A stretch of 64,000 bases of DNA, taken from positions 62,001-126,000 of IMG/VR virus record IMGVR_UViG_3300043418_000114; one strand, given 5' to 3'. The notes beneath the pieces are model-generated. The model ran no database searches and was not told the DNA's origin. It worked only from the letters and a program-made list of their open reading frames with translations. Shown piece after piece: positions 41,370 to 48,039 of this stretch; positions within the stretch are counted from its first letter, which is position 1; the number at the start of each line of letters is the position of its first letter. The translations under genes and the position numbers were made by a program.

Positions 41370-41394
41370 AAAGAGGGCTTACGCCCTCTTTTTT
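41368..41394. terminator. Bidirectional terminator
   Basis: AAAAAGAGGGC-TTAC-GCCCTCTTTTTT between convergent genes. Confidence 0.85.
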
Positions 41395-42055
41395 ATTTAA
41401 TGGATTTGCAGTTCTCGCCATGCCATCTATTATAATTTCCTTTATCTACTAGTTTTTGGCAATGCGGACATGTGATGCTAGATTTGAACATGCCTTCTCT
41501 TATTTTTGATCTTCCCTCATCAGTCCAGTGTTTACCAAACATATGATGATCTGTCCCAAACTTTTTACTTTCATCACTGCGAGTTTTTCCATACATTGGA
41601 TTGTTATGATCACTAAAGTTCGGTCGATTAGCCTTCATCTTTTCAATAGATTCAAATGAATGCTTTTTACCGAACATCCCATTTAATTCACCTTCTAATT
41701 TTTTACCGAACATCCCGTTCTTTTTCCCGAAACTAGCTTTCCTTCTTCTAGTCTCAACTGAATCATTACTAGCACCCTCGCCACCATCAGTTTTATTTCT
41801 CAAAATTCCTGTATGTAGGTCTTGTCTACCATACCATTGTATCATTCTTCTTTCGATAGCAAAGGCACCGAGTTCAGTTAAGTTTTGTTCTAGAATTACT
41901 ATTTTTGAATGGTCTTTGGGCACACTAACAGTATGTCTTTCTACTGCTCTTTTGTTTTTACCCTTGCCGATATAATATGGCGTATTGTCTGATTGTCTAA
42001 TATATGCGTAGACATAAAATCCAGCTGGTGGATTATGTTTGTTATAAATATTCAT
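41393..42055 (-). mobile_element. Free-standing GIY-YIG homing endonuclease with NUMOD3 repeats
   Basis: FYVYAY...[16 protein letters not shown], repeated NGMFGKK/NPMYGKT/HMFGKH, C-terminal CPHC. Confidence 0.85.
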
Positions 42056-43090: not shown

Positions 43091-43702
43091 ATGAATAAGC
43101 ACATGACAGCCGATAATTTTTTTGACAGCGTTGATTACGTAAGTATTATCGATACCGTAAAAGGAATCTATACTAGCGACGGGTCAATGAATACCTTACT
43201 AGACTATGAACGAGTCCTAGATGAGGCAGACATATACGCATTTAAGAACTGGGACCTAGGTGAATTAGTCCAAGGACCTATTGCAAAGCGTTACTCAGTA
43301 TCTTGTATTTTCATGTGGCCATATAAATTAATGCCTGACCCACGTGCAGTTAAGCGCCTATTGAGTATTGGATGCGATGTTCAATATGCAAGTTCTTCTA
43401 TTGAAGTTCCAGTAGAAGTCGAAGACTATGACGACTTTGTGCCAGGCACGAGATATCCAAAGATGAAGAAACGCAAGATTTGGTTCGTCAATATCGTTAT
43501 TCCACGTGATTTAATGGACGATATCAAAGAAGGTTCTATCGACTTGTCAGATCAAACCATCGACTTGGAAGAAATCGATGATGCATACGATGAAGATTTA
43601 GATCAACAAGATACACAAGAAGGCCAAGGCAGTGATGGCATGGGCACCGATGGTGCAGGCCAAGAAGCGCAACCAGGTCAAGCTCCAACACCGGCGATAT
43701 AA
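43091..43702 (+). CDS. Hypothetical acidic protein
   Basis: 203-aa ORF with late box. Confidence 0.7.
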   Translation: MNKHMTADNFFDSVDYVSIIDTVKGIYTSDGSMNTLLDYERVLDEADIYAFKNWDLGELVQGPIAKRYSVSCIFMWPYKLMPDPRAVKRLLSIGCDVQYASSSIEVPVEVEDYDDFVPGTRYPKMKKRKIWFVNIVIPRDLMDDIKEGSIDLSDQTIDLEEIDDAYDEDLDQQDTQEGQGSDGMGTDGAGQEAQPGQAPTPAI

Positions 43703-43703
43703 T

Positions 43704-44252
43704 ATGACAAGAATTCTTAATGAAGGTTTAGATTATCACGATTTAGTAGGACAGTTAGAGCCTACTGTTTCAGTCGATGAATACAAAGCCAAGATGGGCA
43801 AAGATAGTGATGTTGTCACTCTAGCATTTTACATTAAAAGTGAAGCCGCCGGTGACGACTTAGTTAATTGGTTCGAGCGCGGTTATGAATATGTTTTGGA
43901 TGCCAGCATAAGTGAAGGTCCATTGGACAATGGCAAGTACTTAGTGTTTGTTGAATTGAAACGTAGAAACGCAGTTCCAGAGCGAATCATCGAAATGATC
44001 GAGGACATGGTTACGTTGACTGACTTACCATTGGTAGATTGGACAATCGTCGTTGACGGCGAAGACTATGAAGCTGAGGAAGATATTCTAAAGCAAGTGA
44101 TTACCACTAGCCCACATGAATACAGAGAAAAGTTCGAAAAAGAAGACGAAGACATTAACGAAATGCGTCAACGTGCAGGTTTAGATACAAAGAAGAATCT
44201 ACCAGAACAAGACTCAGAAATCAAATCATTTAAATCAATGGCAGGACTATAA
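43704..44252 (+). CDS. Hypothetical acidic protein (start ATG 43704, MTRILNE)
   Basis: ATG just after upstream stop; ends RQRAGL...KSMAGL. Confidence 0.7.
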   Translation: MTRILNEGLDYHDLVGQLEPTVSVDEYKAKMGKDSDVVTLAFYIKSEAAGDDLVNWFERGYEYVLDASISEGPLDNGKYLVFVELKRRNAVPERIIEMIEDMVTLTDLPLVDWTIVVDGEDYEAEEDILKQVITTSPHEYREKFEKEDEDINEMRQRAGLDTKKNLPEQDSEIKSFKSMAGL

Positions 44253-44253
44253 C

Positions 44254-44937
44254 ATGGCAACAATACTAGCAAAAAAATCAGGTCCAACTGACAATGCCAT
44301 CGCTACTGACGATGAACATCACGAAGCATTAGCCGCTGATCCTACTATTAATGCTTTCCCACAGGGTAGCACGTTTGGAGACACAAATGCATTCCCAGCA
44401 ACAACAGCGACTTTCGGTTCACCAGCAACAAGCACAACAAGCGGTTTCGGATCTACAGCATCAGGAGGAGGTTTTGGATCTCCATCGACAGGCTCAAGTT
44501 TTGGAGCACCAGCAACGAGCGGCTTTGGGTCAAGTCCAGCAGTTGGAGGCAGTTCGTTTGGGGCAAGTCCAATGGGTGCAGGACAACCAGGATCAGTGCA
44601 AGTAGTACAGAATCAAGGTGAATCACTTAAGAACACTGGCGGCGCTATGCAAGAGGGTGCAGAGAATCTAGTTAAGCTAGATAAAGATGCAACTGATTGG
44701 ATCAACAAGAAATGGCGTCCAGTCATGGGTTGGGTTTATATGTTAACATGTACATGTGACTTTGTGTTATTCCCAATCATGTGGTCATTGTTACAAGCAT
44801 TAACACACGGTAACGTTACATCACAGTGGCAACCTCTAACATTACAAGGCGCAGGATTGTACCATATTGCAATGGGTGCAGTTCTAGGTATCGCCGCATA
44901 TGGTCGAACAAAAGAAAAGGTCGCAGGAGCGGCTTGA
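44254..44937 (+). CDS. Holin-like membrane protein (GTA 3TM holin-like) with N-terminal FG-repeat region
   Basis: WRPVMGWVY and GAVLGIAAYGRTKEK hydrophobic segments; seven FG dipeptides in Ser/Thr/Gly-rich tract. Confidence 0.65.
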   Translation: MATILAKKSGPTDNAIATDDEHHEALAADPTINAFPQGSTFGDTNAFPATTATFGSPATSTTSGFGSTASGGGFGSPSTGSSFGAPATSGFGSSPAVGGSSFGASPMGAGQPGSVQVVQNQGESLKNTGGAMQEGAENLVKLDKDATDWINKKWRPVMGWVYMLTCTCDFVLFPIMWSLLQALTHGNVTSQWQPLTLQGAGLYHIAMGAVLGIAAYGRTKEKVAGAA

Positions 44938-44962
44938 CAAACGCTAAATTAGGTGTTACACT
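44934..44962 (+). promoter_or_regulatory. sigma70-like promoter, leaderless dnaJ mRNA predicted
   Basis: TTGACA-N17-TACACT with TG extension; ATG 6 nt downstream, no SD. Confidence 0.75.
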
Positions 44963-44968
44963 CACTTA

Positions 44969-45778
44969 ATGGATCATTATCAAACTCTCGGAGTGGCTAA
45001 AACAGCCACTGCCGACGAAATCAAAAAAGCATATCGCAAACTTGCAAGTCAACACCACCCAGACAAGGGTGGTGATACTGCTAAATTCCAAGAAATTCAA
45101 ACAGCATACGATACTCTTTCTGACCCAAACAAGCGTCAAGAGTATGATAATCCGCGACCACAGTTTCAAGACTTTGGTGGTGGATTCCCAGGTGGCTTTA
45201 GTTTCCATCAGGGTGGTGGATTTGAAGACTTGTTTGAAATGTTCAATAGACACAACAATCAACAACGTAGACAACAACAAGTCTTTAGAACGGCAGTTCA
45301 AGTTAGTTTGTTTCAGGCATATCATGGTGGCGAACAAGCTATTAAATTGCAGACACATACTGGAATACACGGCGTGAATATCACTGTGCCCGTTGGTGTT
45401 AATAATGGTGATCAAGTTCGCATTGATAATGTAATCGATGGAGCATCATTATTGATTGAGTTCAGAATTCAGCCAGATTTGCGTTTTGAACGCAGAGGTC
45501 ATGATTTAATTGCAACTCAACAAGTGTCAGTTCTGGACCTTATCGTTGGAGGTTCATTTGAATTTACGTCATTAGCTGGCAAAACATTCGAAGTGAATAT
45601 TAAGCCAAAAACACAACCGTATGTTCAGTTGCGTATTCCTGGTCAAGGCATGCCAATAGGGAATTCTGGAAAATTTGGTGACCAAATTATATTGATTAAG
45701 CCCTTTATCCCTGATATGATCGATGAACAAGTTATTAATAGCATTAAGCAACAACAACTTAACTCTGGAGTAAAATGA
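44969..45778 (+). CDS. dnaJ: DnaJ-class co-chaperone (J-domain, G/F region, C-terminal domain, no Zn finger)
   Basis: HYQTLGV...[18 protein letters not shown]. Confidence 0.93.
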
Positions 45779-48039
45779 TTAATTCACCTGAAATTGAAAG
45801 CATTATCGAGAATGCGATTGAACTTGCGAAAACTCGTAAGCATCAATACTGTACCCTAGAACACTTGCTTCTAGCACTTGTCAGCCATCAACCATTCAAG
45901 AAATGTGTTGGTGGATTTGGCGCTGACGTTGACTCGTTGATTGCTGAACTGGGAACCTATCTAGATAGTCTTCACGCTATCGAAAGTAAAGACCCTGACG
46001 TTAACCCTCGCAAGACTAACGCACTTGAACGTGCCATTAATCGCAGTGTTACTCAAGTATTGTTTACTGGTCGTCGCCAAGTAACCACCATCGACTTTTA
46101 TTTGTCTATTGCCGCAGAAGGCAACAGTCACGCACATTACTTCCTGTTGAAGTATGGCATCAACAAGAATGAGTTCGTTGCTTACTGGCAAAAGAACTAT
46201 AAAGGCCAAGAGTTCACTAGCTCATTGACCGAAAATCAAGCTGATGAAATCCTTGAAGAATACACCACTAATTTGAGTCAACTTGCCAAAGCAGGCAAAC
46301 TTGAGCCTCTGATTGGTCGAAGCAAAGAATTGGATGATATCGTTAACGTTCTCGCTAAACGATTCAAAGCTAACGTGTTGATGGTTGGCGATCCTGGTGT
46401 TGGTAAGACTGCAATCGCAGAAGGTCTAGCTAACATGATTCAAGAAGGCAATGCTCCTGAGTTCCTAACTGACCACGAAGTATATTCACTTGAAGTTGGC
46501 GCATTGCTTGCTGGTAGTAAGTATCGTGGTGACTTTGAAGAAAAGGTCAAAGCTGTCCTTGATGCTCTGAACACCAAGAAGAAAGCTATCTTGTTCATTG
46601 ACGAAGCTCATACTATGAGTGGCGCAGGCTCAAGTAACAATGGTGGTCCTGACTTTGCTAACATGATCAAGCCTGCAATCACTAAGGGTACACTGAAAGT
46701 TATTGCAAGCACAACATGGGAAGAGTTCTACGAATCATTTGAGAAGGATCGTGCCTTGATGCGCCGATTCTATCGTGTTGCAATTGACGAGCCTAGTCAA
46801 GAATCTACCGTTCGCATTCTGTCTGGTTTGTCTACTCGCCTAAACGACTTCCACAAAGTCAACATCACAGAAGAAGCGATCAAGGCGGCAGTCGAAAGCT
46901 CTGCCCGATATATCCATGATCGTAAGAACCCTGATAAGTCGATTGACTTGTTAGATGCCGCATGTGCTAAACAACGTGTAGCGAACAACGAAGGTGCAAC
47001 CATCACCAAAGAATTGGTGTTTGAACAAGTTGAGAAGTTCACTGGCGTACCAGCCGATAAACTCAGTGGCGACAACTACGATATGATTAGTAACCTAGAT
47101 GTGAACGTCAAAGGCAAGTTGTATGGCCAAGATGAAACAGTTGACCAAGTTCTAGAACGTGTGTATGTTTCATTCGCTGGTATCAACAATGATACTAAGC
47201 CAACTGCAAGTTTCTTATTCTTGGGCCCAACTGGTACAGGTAAAACTGAACTAGCTAAGTTGCTGTCTAAGAATCTTGACATGCCGTTGCTCAAGTATGA
47301 TATGTCTGAATACGGTGAGAAACATTCAGTCTCTAGTTTGATTGGACCTCCTCCAGGCTATGTTGGCTTCGGCGACAGTCAAGTTGGTGGCGGTCGATTG
47401 ATTAGCGACTTGAGTAAGAACCCGCACTCAATCATGTTGTTTGACGAAGTTGAAAAAGCTCACCCTGATATTTTCAACATCTTCCTGCAAATGCTTGATG
47501 AAGGTACTATTACAGGCTCGAACGGCAAGAAGGTTAGTTGCAAAAACTCTATCATTATCTTGACTTCCAACTTGGGTAGTGCTGATGGTGAACGCAATCA
47601 GATCGGCTTCGGTAGTCAAGAAAAGACTGGCGAAGATGATAAAGCATTGAAAGACTTCTTTAAGCCAGAGTTCCGTAATCGTCTTGATCTTGTATGTAAG
47701 TTCAACAAGCTCGATGGTCTTGCAATCAAGAAAATCGTTGTTAAGTTTACCGAAGACTTAAAGAAACAGTTGCTCGATAAGCACAACATTACATTCAATC
47801 TAAGCGAAGGCGCCATTGAATATCTAGCAGAACAAGGCTATGATAAGAAGATGGGCGCACGACCACTAGCACGTAAAATTGACGAACTAGTGCGAGTTCC
47901 ACTATCGAAAAAGATTCTGTTTGAGCGTATCAAAAACGCAAACATCACCGCAGTGATGGGCACAGACGGTATCGAATTCAACGTAGTGAACACCACAACG
48001 GCACGAGTAGGCGAAGATGGCATTATTGAAGTCAATTGA
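45775..48039 (+). CDS. clpA: ATP-dependent Clp protease ATPase subunit, ClpA-like
   Basis: Clp N-domain, two AAA+ modules ([16 protein letters not shown]), IGF ClpP-docking loop, GARPL. Confidence 0.93.

What the first reader, a model, noticed from the sequence alone, without database searches (positions are those of the whole stretch)
44254..44937. Holin-like membrane protein with nucleoporin-like FG repeats
Seen: roughly 44356-44580 encodes a Ser/Thr/Gly/Ala/Pro-rich, nearly uncharged tract with seven FG dipeptides about every 8-13 aa (STFGD, ATFGS, SGFGS, GGFGS, SSFGA, SGFGS, SSFGA). It precedes a WRPxxGW...GRTxEK membrane domain resembling GTA-type holins. The repeats are diverged at DNA level, suggesting protein-level selection. 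Established: FG repeats form cohesive selective barriers in nuclear pores. Inference: the tail may cluster the holin or gate its pore by phase separation.
Basis: partly seen in the sequence, partly recalled or inferred. Interest (0 to 1): 0.6.

Follow-up and report, generated by a model that had tools for sequence, protein, structure and literature searches.

The report
Phage holin-like protein with FG-repeat tail
A freshwater jumbo phage encodes a small two-helix membrane protein of a holin (cell-lysis) family whose cytoplasmic tail is a disordered, uncharged string of Phe-Gly motifs; the motif is kept by selection in most relatives but missing from some, so it looks like an adjustable add-on whose function is still untested.

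Summary
ORF 44254-44937(+) encodes 227 aa with seven FG dipeptides in an uncharged S/T/G/A/P tract (aa 35-109). A conserved linker and a two-helix membrane module follow; the module passes Pfam's threshold for GTA_holin_3TM (PF11351) but covers only the last two of its three helices.

The window is part of a complete 364-kb freshwater jumbo phage related to PA5oct, Atu_ph07 and RaK2.

Across 101 close homologues:
- 88% of tract Phe are followed by Gly (22.5% expected).
- Charged residues are 0.8% of the tract.
- FG counts are about four times the shuffle expectation.
- FG codons vary synonymously, and there is no DNA repeat.

Selection therefore acts on the protein motif. The tract is nonetheless labile and dispensable. 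One positional orthologue has 0 FG, with an N/Q/Y-rich stretch instead. A 138-aa form with a membrane module about 80% identical has no tract. A third phage lineage, with a different N-terminus, also carries FG repeats.

Charge distribution puts the tail in the cytoplasm. The membrane module passes an in-silico self-association test.

Best reading: a class-II-like holin or pinholin whose cohesive tail tunes clustering and lysis timing. The holin role and the tail's role are both inferred. The resemblance to nucleoporins is compositional, not homologous.

Verdict: new variant of a known kind; moderate interest.

The parts
44254..44937 (+). Gene for the 227-aa FG-tailed holin-family membrane protein (P0001)
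   Evidence: ORF. Pfam PF11351 E=7.5e-7 over the cut-off. PHROG 3427 holin. More than 7,500 homologous 90% clusters.
44254..44355 (+). Conserved acidic N-terminal motif, aa 1-34 (MATILAKKSGPxDNAIAxDDEHHEALAxDP...), net charge -4, with a short predicted helix at aa 22-27
   Evidence: Mean majority fraction 0.80 in alignment A1. Helix. Charge.
44356..44580 (+). FG-repeat tract, aa 35-109: seven FG, two FP, 0 K/R, 1 D; predicted disordered
   Evidence: No DNA tandem repeat.
44581..44718 (+). Conserved linker and basic juxtamembrane segment, aa 110-155 (QNQxESLKxxGGAMxEGxExxVxLDKDATDWINKKWR); shared by all N-terminal variants
   Evidence: Five K/R in aa 140-155.
44719..44793 (+). Transmembrane helix 1, aa 156-180 (equivalent to TM2 of the Pfam 3-TM model)
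   Evidence: Hydropathy. AF2 helix 144-183 with pLDDT 74-81. Pfam profile positions 50-122.
44794..44847 (+). Uncharged periplasmic loop, aa 181-198 (..SQWQPLTLQ), nearly invariant
   Evidence: 0 K/R/D/E. Majority fraction 0.93.
44848..44901 (+). Transmembrane helix 2, aa 199-216 (GAGLYHIAMGAVLGIAAY); the consensus residue is present in all 50 aligned sequences (rounded 1.00)
44902..44937 (+). Short basic cytoplasmic C-tail, aa 217-227 (GRTKEKVAGAA), plus the stop codon
   Evidence: 3 K/R, 1 E.
43091..43702 (+). First gene of the tightly packed five-gene run: 203-aa protein of PHROG 12928. Its PA5oct homologue was detected in virions.
43704..44252 (+). Second gene of the run: 182-aa protein of PHROG 13138, a core protein of RaK2, Atu_ph07 and PA5oct-type jumbo phages. 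It ends 1 nt before the FG gene.
44969..45778 (+). DnaJ-like co-chaperone (J domain, G/F-rich region, DnaJ_C) immediately downstream
45775..48039 (+). ClpA/ClpB-like double-AAA+ ATPase whose start overlaps the DnaJ stop by 4 nt

Best explanation
The gene encodes a two-helix, N-in/C-in derivative of the PF11351 (GTA-type) holin family in a 364-kb freshwater jumbo phage.

The membrane hairpin self-associates in the host inner membrane. At a critical density it depolarises or permeabilises the membrane. That would activate a separately encoded SleB-type endolysin, which carries its own N-terminal signal or anchor sequence; this is pinholin-like logic.

The first helix of the 3-TM family is replaced by a cytoplasmic tail of about 155 aa: an acidic conserved N-terminal peptide, then a disordered, uncharged FG-repeat tract, then a conserved linker. 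I propose that the Phe residues act as weak multivalent 'stickers'. These make the tails of neighbouring molecules cohere under the membrane and so set the concentration and sharpness at which the holin clusters and fires. Tract length and FG number would then be an evolvable dial for lysis timing.

Shown:
- the gene and its domain map
- family membership by HMM
- predicted disorder
- selection on the FG motif
- lability of the tract among relatives
- an in-silico pass for self-association of the membrane module

Inferred:
- topology (positive-inside rule)
- holin or pinholin activity
- partnership with the SleB-like enzyme
- any role of the FG tract in clustering or timing
For: Family:
- PF11351 scores 30.1 bits against a 24.8 cut-off, and PHROG 3427 'holin' matches at E=2.4e-8.
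- It is the only PF11351 copy in the genome.
- The family's founding member rcc00556 is required for lysis and release of RcGTA (PMC5026251, PMC3423380).

Topology:
- Two hydrophobic segments, 5 K/R before TM1, 3 K/R after TM2 and none in the loop.
- Helices at 144-183 and 199-216, with pLDDT below 50 for most of aa 37-132.

Self-association: four copies of aa 118-227 score 0.45 against a best control of 0.00. That mark was reached by 21 of 30 solved homo-pairs and 0 of 23 single chains. Runs agree in at least 71% of contacts, and partner pLDDT is at least 67.

Endolysin: PF07486 at genome ~255 kb, E=1.1e-21, with the N-terminal hydrophobic stretch KMLFLGLIAVICLLGTSKVNA-PP. This is the same enzyme type as PA5oct's candidate endolysin (PMC7318152).

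Selection on FG:
- 573 of 651 tract Phe are followed by Gly.
- D/E/K/R make up 0.84% of the tract.
- Observed FG averages 5.7 against 1.45 in shuffles, with z of at least 2.2 in all 101 sequences.
- FG columns score 0.71 against 0.45 for spacers.
- Codon use is synonymous and varied, and there is no DNA repeat.

Sticker-like logic:
- A second lineage with a different N-terminus (MPKLDEDDF...) in a different genome context also has 3-6 FG.
- Some orthologues replace FG with another uncharged, aromatic-bearing N/Q/Y-rich stretch (P0156, P0176).
- FG number changes about 20 times on the membrane-domain tree.
Against: - No endolysin, spanin or antiholin gene is adjacent here or in the two other lineages examined. 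The candidate endolysin is ~149 kb away.
- Only two of the family's three helices are present.
- The experimentally tested ICP1 TeaA is not detected by the Pfam model, so experimental support transfers only from rcc00556.
- The PA5oct homologue was annotated as a virion protein by mass spectrometry.
- A positional orthologue with 0 FG and a tract-less 138-aa form exist, so the tract is not needed for the core function.
- The membrane module is unusually conserved for a holin, at 75-89% identity across different phage contexts.
- The tract is short (median 74 aa in homologues; 7 FG here, about 5-6 on average), and nothing here measures cohesion.
- The structure model is of low overall confidence (mean pLDDT 53.6).
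- The tree is FastTree on 108 columns.
Confidence: 0.45

Rival explanations
1. The FG tract is essentially neutral low-complexity filler, a flexible tether. It only spaces the conserved acidic N-terminal peptide from the membrane module. The functional elements are the N-peptide, acting as a docking motif, and the hairpin. FG enrichment would then reflect a mutational or compositional habit rather than function.
For: - The tract is indel-rich: 144 alignment columns for 75 residues, with a gap fraction of 0.16.
- Its length ranges from 57 to 103 aa.
- Positional orthologues with 0-2 FG exist.
- The N-peptide is much better conserved than the tract, 0.80 against 0.50.
Against: - 88% of tract Phe are followed by Gly against 22.5% expected, with z of at least 2.2 in every one of 101 sequences.
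- There is no DNA repeat to propagate the motif, and codons vary synonymously.
- FG columns are more conserved than spacers.
- FG tracts recur behind a different N-terminal motif in another phage lineage.
- Charged and aliphatic residues are almost excluded, which a neutral linker would not require.
Confidence: 0.2
2. The tail is a handle for protein quality control. The disordered cytoplasmic N-tail is engaged by the co-transcribed DnaJ-like and ClpA-like proteins, or by host FtsH or Clp proteases. The amount of active membrane protein, and hence timing, would then be set by chaperone holding or proteolysis rather than by FG-FG cohesion.
For: - The gene sits 31 nt upstream of DnaJ, inside a packed run of five genes. 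That order is kept in nearly all of 80 related IMG/VR loci that reach far enough.
- PA5oct has the same operon without this gene, so its insertion here is clade-specific.
- From established knowledge, AAA+ proteases start on unstructured cytoplasmic tails of membrane proteins, and DnaJ prefers aromatic-containing segments.
Against: - The FG-bearing type B protein and the tract-less type C protein lie in other contexts without chaperone neighbours.
- Synteny among close relatives is weak evidence.
- No binding test was run.
- The tract has no basic residues, which DnaK-type binding sites usually carry.
Confidence: 0.12
3. It is not the lysis holin. The two-helix jumbo-phage subfamily is instead a virion-associated or early membrane protein, for example part of the DNA-entry channel or a superinfection-exclusion factor, and the tail serves that role.
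For: - The PA5oct homologue EST35_0306 is annotated 'structural protein, ESI-MS/MS' and lies among virion genes.
- The Atu_ph07 copy lies two genes downstream of a tail-fibre gene.
- Here the gene follows two proteins whose PHROG families are labelled virion structural.
- No lysis genes are adjacent in any lineage examined.
- The membrane module is more conserved than holins usually are.
Against: - Pfam and PHROG both place it in a holin family.
- It is the only holin-family hit found in the genome.
- Lysis genes are commonly scattered in large phages (established for T4).
- Small abundant late membrane proteins often contaminate virion preparations.
- A 150-aa cytoplasmic disordered tail has no obvious place in a capsid or tail.
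Confidence: 0.15

Closest known systems
PF11351 GTA_holin_3TM (founding member R. capsulatus rcc00556; also annotated as the holin of HTVC010P-type pelagiphages)
   Same: The HMM match is over the curated threshold across the last two helices, including the W(R/K)P juxtamembrane motif and the short basic C-tail. The protein is a small phage-encoded membrane protein.
   Different: It has only two helices. The first helix is replaced by a cytoplasmic tail of about 155 aa with FG repeats. It is not next to an endolysin, whereas rcc00556 and the pelagiphage copies are (PMC5026251; bioRxiv 10.1101/672428).
Two-helix homologues in cultured jumbo phages: PA5oct EST35_0306 (108 aa), Atu_ph07 AUZ95057 (127 aa), Phosso XYS97366 (174 aa)
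   Same: Same two-helix hairpin with 30-36% identity: K-rich start, W(R/K)P, the WxPLTLxGxGxxHxAxG loop and TM2. All are in jumbo phages that share the PhoH / structural protein / DnaJ / ClpA module.
   Different: They have only 10-25 residues before TM1 and no FG tract. Phosso instead has a Q/Y/P-rich C-terminal extension. The gene lies 6-17 kb from the chaperone operon rather than inside it.
Class II holins and pinholins (phage 21 S68) acting with signal-anchored endolysins
   Same: Predicted two helices with N-in/C-in topology and small size. A candidate endolysin with its own N-terminal hydrophobic export or anchor segment is encoded elsewhere.
   Different: No sequence relationship was tested or claimed. 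S68 activation needs its first helix to leave the membrane, which a 155-aa cytoplasmic tail would hinder. The SAR nature of the SleB-like enzyme is unproven.
T4 holin T and ICP1 TeaA (holins with regulatory soluble domains and antiholins)
   Same: The concept is shared: a holin whose extra-membrane domain sets lysis timing, with lysis genes scattered in a large genome (PMC7182436).
   Different: Their regulatory domains are folded and bind dedicated antiholins. Here the domain is a low-complexity disordered tract. The Pfam model does not detect TeaA in ICP1.
Cohesive FG domains of nucleoporins (Nup98 GLFG type, Nup62/Nsp1 N-terminal type)
   Same: Phe is almost the only hydrophobe and is nearly always followed by Gly. 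Spacing is about 8-13 aa, spacers are S/T/G/A/N/Q/P, under 1% of residues are charged, disorder is predicted, and motif and composition are conserved while sequence and length drift.
   Different: No homology was found: no Pfam family matched, nucleoporin FG families included. The tract is much shorter (57-103 aa, 3-9 FG in the top 120 full-length homologues). It is anchored to a bacterial inner-membrane hairpin rather than a pore scaffold. No transport receptors are known, and cohesion is untested.

Membership tests
Pfam PF11351 GTA_holin_3TM | Sequence scores above the family's curated gathering threshold | tested here: met
   30.1 bits against a 24.8 cut-off, E=7.5e-7, residues 134-218. Confirmed on the genome at 29.8 bits.
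Pfam PF11351 GTA_holin_3TM | Three transmembrane helices | tested here: not met
   Only profile positions 50-122 of 123 are matched. There are two hydrophobic segments and two long helices in the model. The region where the first helix would be is the disordered FG tail.
Pfam PF11351 GTA_holin_3TM | Encoded next to an endolysin (as for rcc00555/rcc00556 and HTVC010P-type phages) | tested here: not met
   Neighbours are PhoH, two structural-type proteins, DnaJ and ClpA-like. The only cell-wall hydrolase family found (PF07486) is ~149 kb away. PF00959, PF01510, PF01464, PF01551, PF08291 and PF13539 are absent.
Holins in general | Small phage membrane protein with at least one TM helix and a short charged cytoplasmic C-terminus | tested here: met
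   227 aa, two TM segments, C-tail GRTKEKVAGAA.
Holins in general | Self-association in the membrane | tested here: inconclusive
   In-silico only. Four copies of aa 118-227 score 0.45 against a best control of 0.00. The mark was reached by 21 of 30 solved homo-pairs and 0 of 23 single chains. Contact agreement is at least 71% and partner pLDDT at least 67. The calibration used two copies, not four.
Holins in general | Collapses membrane potential and permits endolysin-dependent lysis at a programmed time | not testable with these tools
   Needs expression and lysis assays.
Pinholin with signal-anchored (SAR) endolysin | Two TM helices, N-in/C-in | tested here: met
   Positive-inside rule: 5 K/R before TM1, 0 in the loop, 3 after TM2. 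This is a prediction only.
Pinholin with signal-anchored (SAR) endolysin | Partner endolysin carries an N-terminal signal-anchor-release domain | tested here: inconclusive
   The SleB-like 196-aa protein starts with a hydrophobic stretch followed by VNA-PP. Whether this is a cleaved signal, a stable anchor or a SAR domain cannot be told from sequence.
FG nucleoporins | Multiple FG motifs in a disordered, low-charge spacer sequence | tested here: met
   Seven FG in 75 aa, 0 K/R and 1 D. Family-wide, 88% of Phe are followed by Gly and 0.84% of residues are charged. pLDDT is below 50.
FG nucleoporins | Homology to nucleoporin FG-repeat families | tested here: not met
   No Pfam family at E up to 10 for the N-terminal halves of four members. 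No usable Atlas look-alike.
FG nucleoporins | Cohesive phase or selective barrier that binds transport receptors | not testable with these tools
   Needs purified protein, hydrogel or condensate assays, and partners.

The most novel reading that the evidence does not exclude
A bacterial virus has independently evolved a miniature FG-nucleoporin-like domain. Tethered under the host inner membrane by a holin hairpin, the uncharged FG tails would condense into a cohesive two-dimensional phase. That phase would either nucleate holin rafts, acting as an all-or-none lysis trigger, or plug the cytoplasmic mouth of the hole as a built-in gate. Natural variation in FG valence (0-9) would serve as the timing dial. 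This would be the first FG-type cohesive barrier or clustering device outside eukaryotes.
Probability: 0.12. Interest if true: 0.85.

Novelty: new variant of a known kind. Interest (0 to 1): 0.55.

Why it matters
Holin timing is the classic example of a molecular clock built from membrane-protein clustering. What sets the critical concentration is still poorly understood outside lambda, phage 21 and T4.

Here a very abundant environmental phage family offers a natural series of tails on a nearly constant membrane module. The family has more than 7,500 protein clusters at 90% identity and 487 IMG/VR contigs. The tails range from no tract to nine FG, and include N/Q/Y-rich substitutes.

That series makes one question directly testable: can sticker-and-spacer disordered tails tune two-dimensional assembly of a membrane protein? 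It would also be a rare prokaryotic-virus case of convergence on FG-repeat chemistry.

If the tail proves irrelevant, the finding reduces to an ordinary holin-family gene with a low-complexity extension.

Tried and rejected
- **DNA similarity to cultured phages:** none by megablast.
- **Common endolysin families in the whole genome:** PF00959, PF01510, PF01464, PF01551, PF08291 and PF13539 gave no hits. Only PF07486 hit.
- **Direct link to the tested holin ICP1 TeaA:** the Pfam model finds nothing in ICP1, so TeaA is only a remote relative and I do not lean on it.
- **Nucleoporin homology:** no Pfam hit for four N-terminal halves at E up to 10, and no Atlas look-alike.
- **Overlapping gene in the open +1 frame (84-aa ORF at 44351-44605):** rejected. 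74% of codon-shuffled tracts are also open in +1, so this is compositional.
- **Recent DNA repeat expansion:** rejected.
- **Lysis neighbours of the type B and type C copies:** none recognisable by PHROGs.
- **Literature on FG repeats in phage or holin proteins:** nothing relevant found.
- **The PA5oct paper:** it does not discuss a holin.
- **Fold search:** not run, because the AF2 model has mean pLDDT 53.6 and the only confident part is a helical hairpin.
- The word search and family scans had already placed the protein.
- **Reads:** Contigs from an RNA library cover the gene, but that does not prove transcription.
- **Genetic code:** only table 11 was used.

Full report
**What is there**

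ORF 44254-44937 on the + strand encodes a 227-aa protein. The tract (aa 35-109, nt 44356-44580) has no Lys or Arg and one Asp. Its 85-aa neighbourhood is G 19, S 17, T 12, A 11, F 9, P 8.

Seven FG against 2.0 expected from shuffling the tract gives p=2.4e-4. Over the N-terminal 150 residues, p=1e-5. Tandem Repeats Finder finds no DNA repeat even at score 30. No other ORF in the 364-kb genome is FG-dense. The runner-up is a NUMOD-type homing endonuclease with unrelated MFGKK repeats.

**Where it is**

The window is positions 62,001-126,000 of a 364,247-bp virus record with direct terminal repeats, rated complete. Nearly identical DNA occurs in freshwater metagenomes from several studies.

Protein similarities place the phage with the jumbo phages PA5oct, Atu_ph07, Phosso and RaK2. 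There is no nucleotide-level match to any cultured phage.

The gene is the third of five tightly packed genes: a 203-aa protein, a 182-aa protein, the FG protein, a DnaJ-like protein and a ClpA-like protein. Spacers are 1, 1 and 31 nt, followed by a 4-nt overlap. The run lies downstream of a divergent PhoH gene.

This order is kept in practically all of 80 related IMG/VR loci that extend far enough. PA5oct has the same module without any gene between the second protein and DnaJ. Its two-helix homologue lies ten genes away. The placement inside the chaperone operon is therefore specific to this freshwater clade.

An RNA-library assembly from an independent study contains 100%-identical contigs covering 43116-44483 and 44547-45752, broken inside the FG tract. 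This shows presence in an RNA library, not proven transcription.

**The membrane module**

Residues 134-218 match Pfam PF11351 GTA_holin_3TM at 30.1 bits (cut-off 24.8), but only profile positions 50-122 of 123. PHROG 3427 'holin' matches at E=2.4e-8.

There are two hydrophobic segments, aa 156-180 and 199-216. Five K/R lie just before the first, three after the second and none in the connecting loop. By the positive-inside rule both termini are cytoplasmic, so the FG tail is cytoplasmic. This is a prediction.

The AlphaFold2 model, built with a 50-sequence alignment, has helices at 144-183 (pLDDT 74-81) and 199-216. pLDDT is below 50 for most of residues 37-132, and the overall mean is 53.6.

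Four copies of aa 118-227 pass the in-silico self-association test. The score is 0.45 against a best control of 0.00. That mark was reached by 21 of 30 solved homo-pairs and 0 of 23 single chains. Contact agreement is at least 71% and partner pLDDT at least 67. The calibration used two copies, not four.

The cultured jumbo-phage homologues (108-174 aa) are the same hairpin with only a short basic N-terminus.

**Is it a holin?**

Family membership by HMM is met, but the three-helix architecture and endolysin adjacency are not.

Experimental support for the family comes from rcc00556 of the R. capsulatus gene transfer agent, which is needed for lysis and release (PMC5026251, PMC3423380). ICP1 TeaA, shown to have holin activity, was linked to PF11351 only by remote-homology tools (PMC7182436). 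The Pfam model finds nothing in ICP1 here.

The genome has a single PF11351 copy. It has none of six common endolysin families. It has one SleB-type hydrolase at ~255 kb (E=1.1e-21), the type proposed as PA5oct's endolysin (PMC7318152). That 196-aa protein begins with a hydrophobic segment followed by VNA-PP. It may therefore export or anchor itself and need only membrane depolarisation for release, which is pinholin logic. This pairing is inference.

Against the holin reading, the PA5oct homologue is annotated as a virion protein by mass spectrometry. No lysis genes flank the gene in any lineage examined.

**The FG tract in relatives**

The word-indexed search returned 7,529 proteins. The best 120 are 202-248 aa long, 59-82% identical to the query (excluding the window's own copy), align over the full length, and each has 3-9 FG.

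In 101 of them with clear domain borders:
- The tract is 57-103 aa long (median 74).
- 573 of 651 Phe (88%) are followed by Gly, although Gly is 22.5% of the tract.
- D/E/K/R make up 0.84% and L/I/V/M/W/Y/C make up 5.6%.
- Observed FG averages 5.7 against 1.45 in shuffles, with z of at least 2.2 in every sequence.

In alignment A1 the FG columns are more conserved than the spacers (0.71 vs 0.45). The tract needs 144 columns for 75 reference residues. The N-terminal peptide scores 0.80 and the membrane module 0.90-1.00.

FG sites use both Phe codons and all four Gly codons. The open +1 frame across the tract is compositional, since 74% of codon shuffles are also open. Selection therefore acts on the protein motif, not on DNA or an overlapping gene.

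**The tract is a variable module**

Searching with aa 118-227 alone found 6,476 shorter proteins. The best 120 have membrane modules 75-89% identical but differ in their N-termini:
- **A:** this window's motif plus a long FG tract.
- **A-short:** the same motif with 0-3 FG, sometimes with an N/Q/Y-rich stretch instead.
- **B:** a different acidic start (MPKLDEDDF...PPPG) followed mostly by 3-6 FG (range 1-6).
- **C:** 136-139 aa, no tract, 0 FG.
- **D:** a related start with one FG.

P0156 (0 FG) sits in the same PhoH / 195 aa / 181 aa / gene / DnaJ / ClpA run, so it is a positional orthologue. Types B and C lie on 335-kb and 221-kb contigs with quite different neighbours.

On a weakly resolved FastTree of the membrane module (108 columns), N-terminal types cluster. 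The high/low FG state needs about 20 changes.

So the FG tract is dispensable for the core function, expands and contracts often, and occurs behind two different N-terminal motifs in two phage lineages.

**How it most likely works**

The hairpin is a class-II-like holin or pinholin, and the tail is a regulatory module on the cytoplasmic face. The tail's chemistry is almost no charge, Phe as the sole hydrophobe, and S/T/G/N/Q spacers. From established work on nucleoporin FG domains and prion-like domains, this is the chemistry of cohesive sticker-and-spacer sequences. It is not that of charged entropic bristles.

Occasional replacement of FG by N/Q/Y-rich sequence fits selection for cohesiveness rather than for a specific binding motif. 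I therefore favour multivalent tail-tail cohesion that sets the threshold and sharpness of holin clustering, with FG valence as a timing dial.

This step is inferred. I put about 0.45 on the whole package: roughly 0.6 on holin or pinholin function and about 0.3 on the sticker role.

Three rivals are scored in the report: a neutral tether for the conserved N-peptide, a handle for the co-encoded DnaJ/ClpA-like proteins or host proteases, and a non-lytic virion or entry role.

**Comparison with known systems and novelty**

The protein is a member of PF11351 by score but an architectural variant, with two helices plus a disordered tail.

It works like, but is not related to, FG nucleoporins. No Pfam family, nucleoporin FG families included, matches the N-terminal half. 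The tract is only 57-103 aa long and is anchored to a bacterial membrane hairpin.

Full-text searches found no report of FG repeats in phage membrane or lysis proteins.

I rate it a new variant of a known kind, with interest 0.55. It is surprising to a lysis specialist and offers a ready-made natural allelic series, but the function is unproven and close orthologues show the tract to be optional.

- Read laying received 2,688 letters.
- Only genetic code 11 was used.
- No step needed referral.

Noticed in passing
Outside the window: genome G000:C1 ~255,174-255,764 (-), = L010:1447-2037(-): A 196-aa SleB-type cell-wall hydrolase (PF07486, E=1.1e-21) with an N-terminal hydrophobic signal or anchor segment followed by VNA-PP. 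It is the only peptidoglycan hydrolase family found among seven tried, so it is the likely endolysin. A SAM-synthetase-like ORF lies next to it.
   Followed up: partly
window 44969-48039 (+): The phage encodes its own DnaJ-like co-chaperone, with a G/F-rich region ([17 protein letters not shown]), and a ClpA/ClpB-like double-AAA+ ATPase. The ATPase start overlaps the DnaJ stop by 4 nt. The pair, preceded by PhoH and a virion-detected protein, is conserved in PA5oct; the DnaJ-ClpA pair is also annotated in Atu_ph07, and Phosso has the ClpA-like gene (DnaJ not checked there).
   Followed up: partly
window 41393-42055 (-): A NUMOD-type homing endonuclease-like ORF with MFGKK repeats lies between the clamp-loader gene and PhoH. 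The related 367-kb and 513-kb contigs (L008, L009) have no gene of this size at that position, so it looks like a mobile insertion.
   Followed up: no
L008 and L009: 5956-6645 (+); also the P0156 contig: Relatives carry a Bax-inhibitor-1 family membrane protein (PF01027, about 225-229 aa) just upstream of the clamp loader. The window phage has a 117-aa ORF there instead. The E. coli member of this family, YccA, modulates FtsH, which may bear on turnover of membrane proteins with disordered tails.
   Followed up: no
L094:6001-6417 and L095:6001-6525: The linker plus two-helix module is about 80-83% identical (BLASTP) in phages whose local gene content is quite different: a 221-kb contig with Tad3, NUDIX, RNaseH and Phage_DsbA neighbours, and a 335-kb contig with UvdE. 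This is unusually high conservation, or exchange, for a holin-type protein.
   Followed up: partly
window 44477-44683: One DNA-run contig (X4, laid at 85% likeness) joins 44477 to 44683, skipping 205 nt that span the end of the FG tract and part of the linker. 205 is not a multiple of three, so it may be a diverged relative or an assembly artefact rather than a natural deletion variant.
   Followed up: no
window 43116-45752: Contigs from a freshwater metatranscriptome of an independent study are 100% identical to 43116-44483 and 44547-45752. The assembly breaks inside the FG tract. This is consistent with expression of the five-gene run but does not prove it.
   Followed up: partly
Outside the window: genome G000:C1 311,335-329,538 (+): A single 6,067-aa ORF, preceded by a 1,124-aa ORF. 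It is presumably a giant structural or fibre-like protein typical of this jumbo-phage group.
   Followed up: no
L003:3977-4501 (Sinorhizobium phage Phosso): The Phosso homologue has no N-terminal tract. It carries a Q/Y/P-rich low-complexity C-terminal extension (...YQQPGYSQQIDPYQMQGQYPVPPQMQGYQ...). A cytoplasmic aromatic-bearing uncharged tail has therefore been added at the other end of the same hairpin in another lineage.
   Followed up: no
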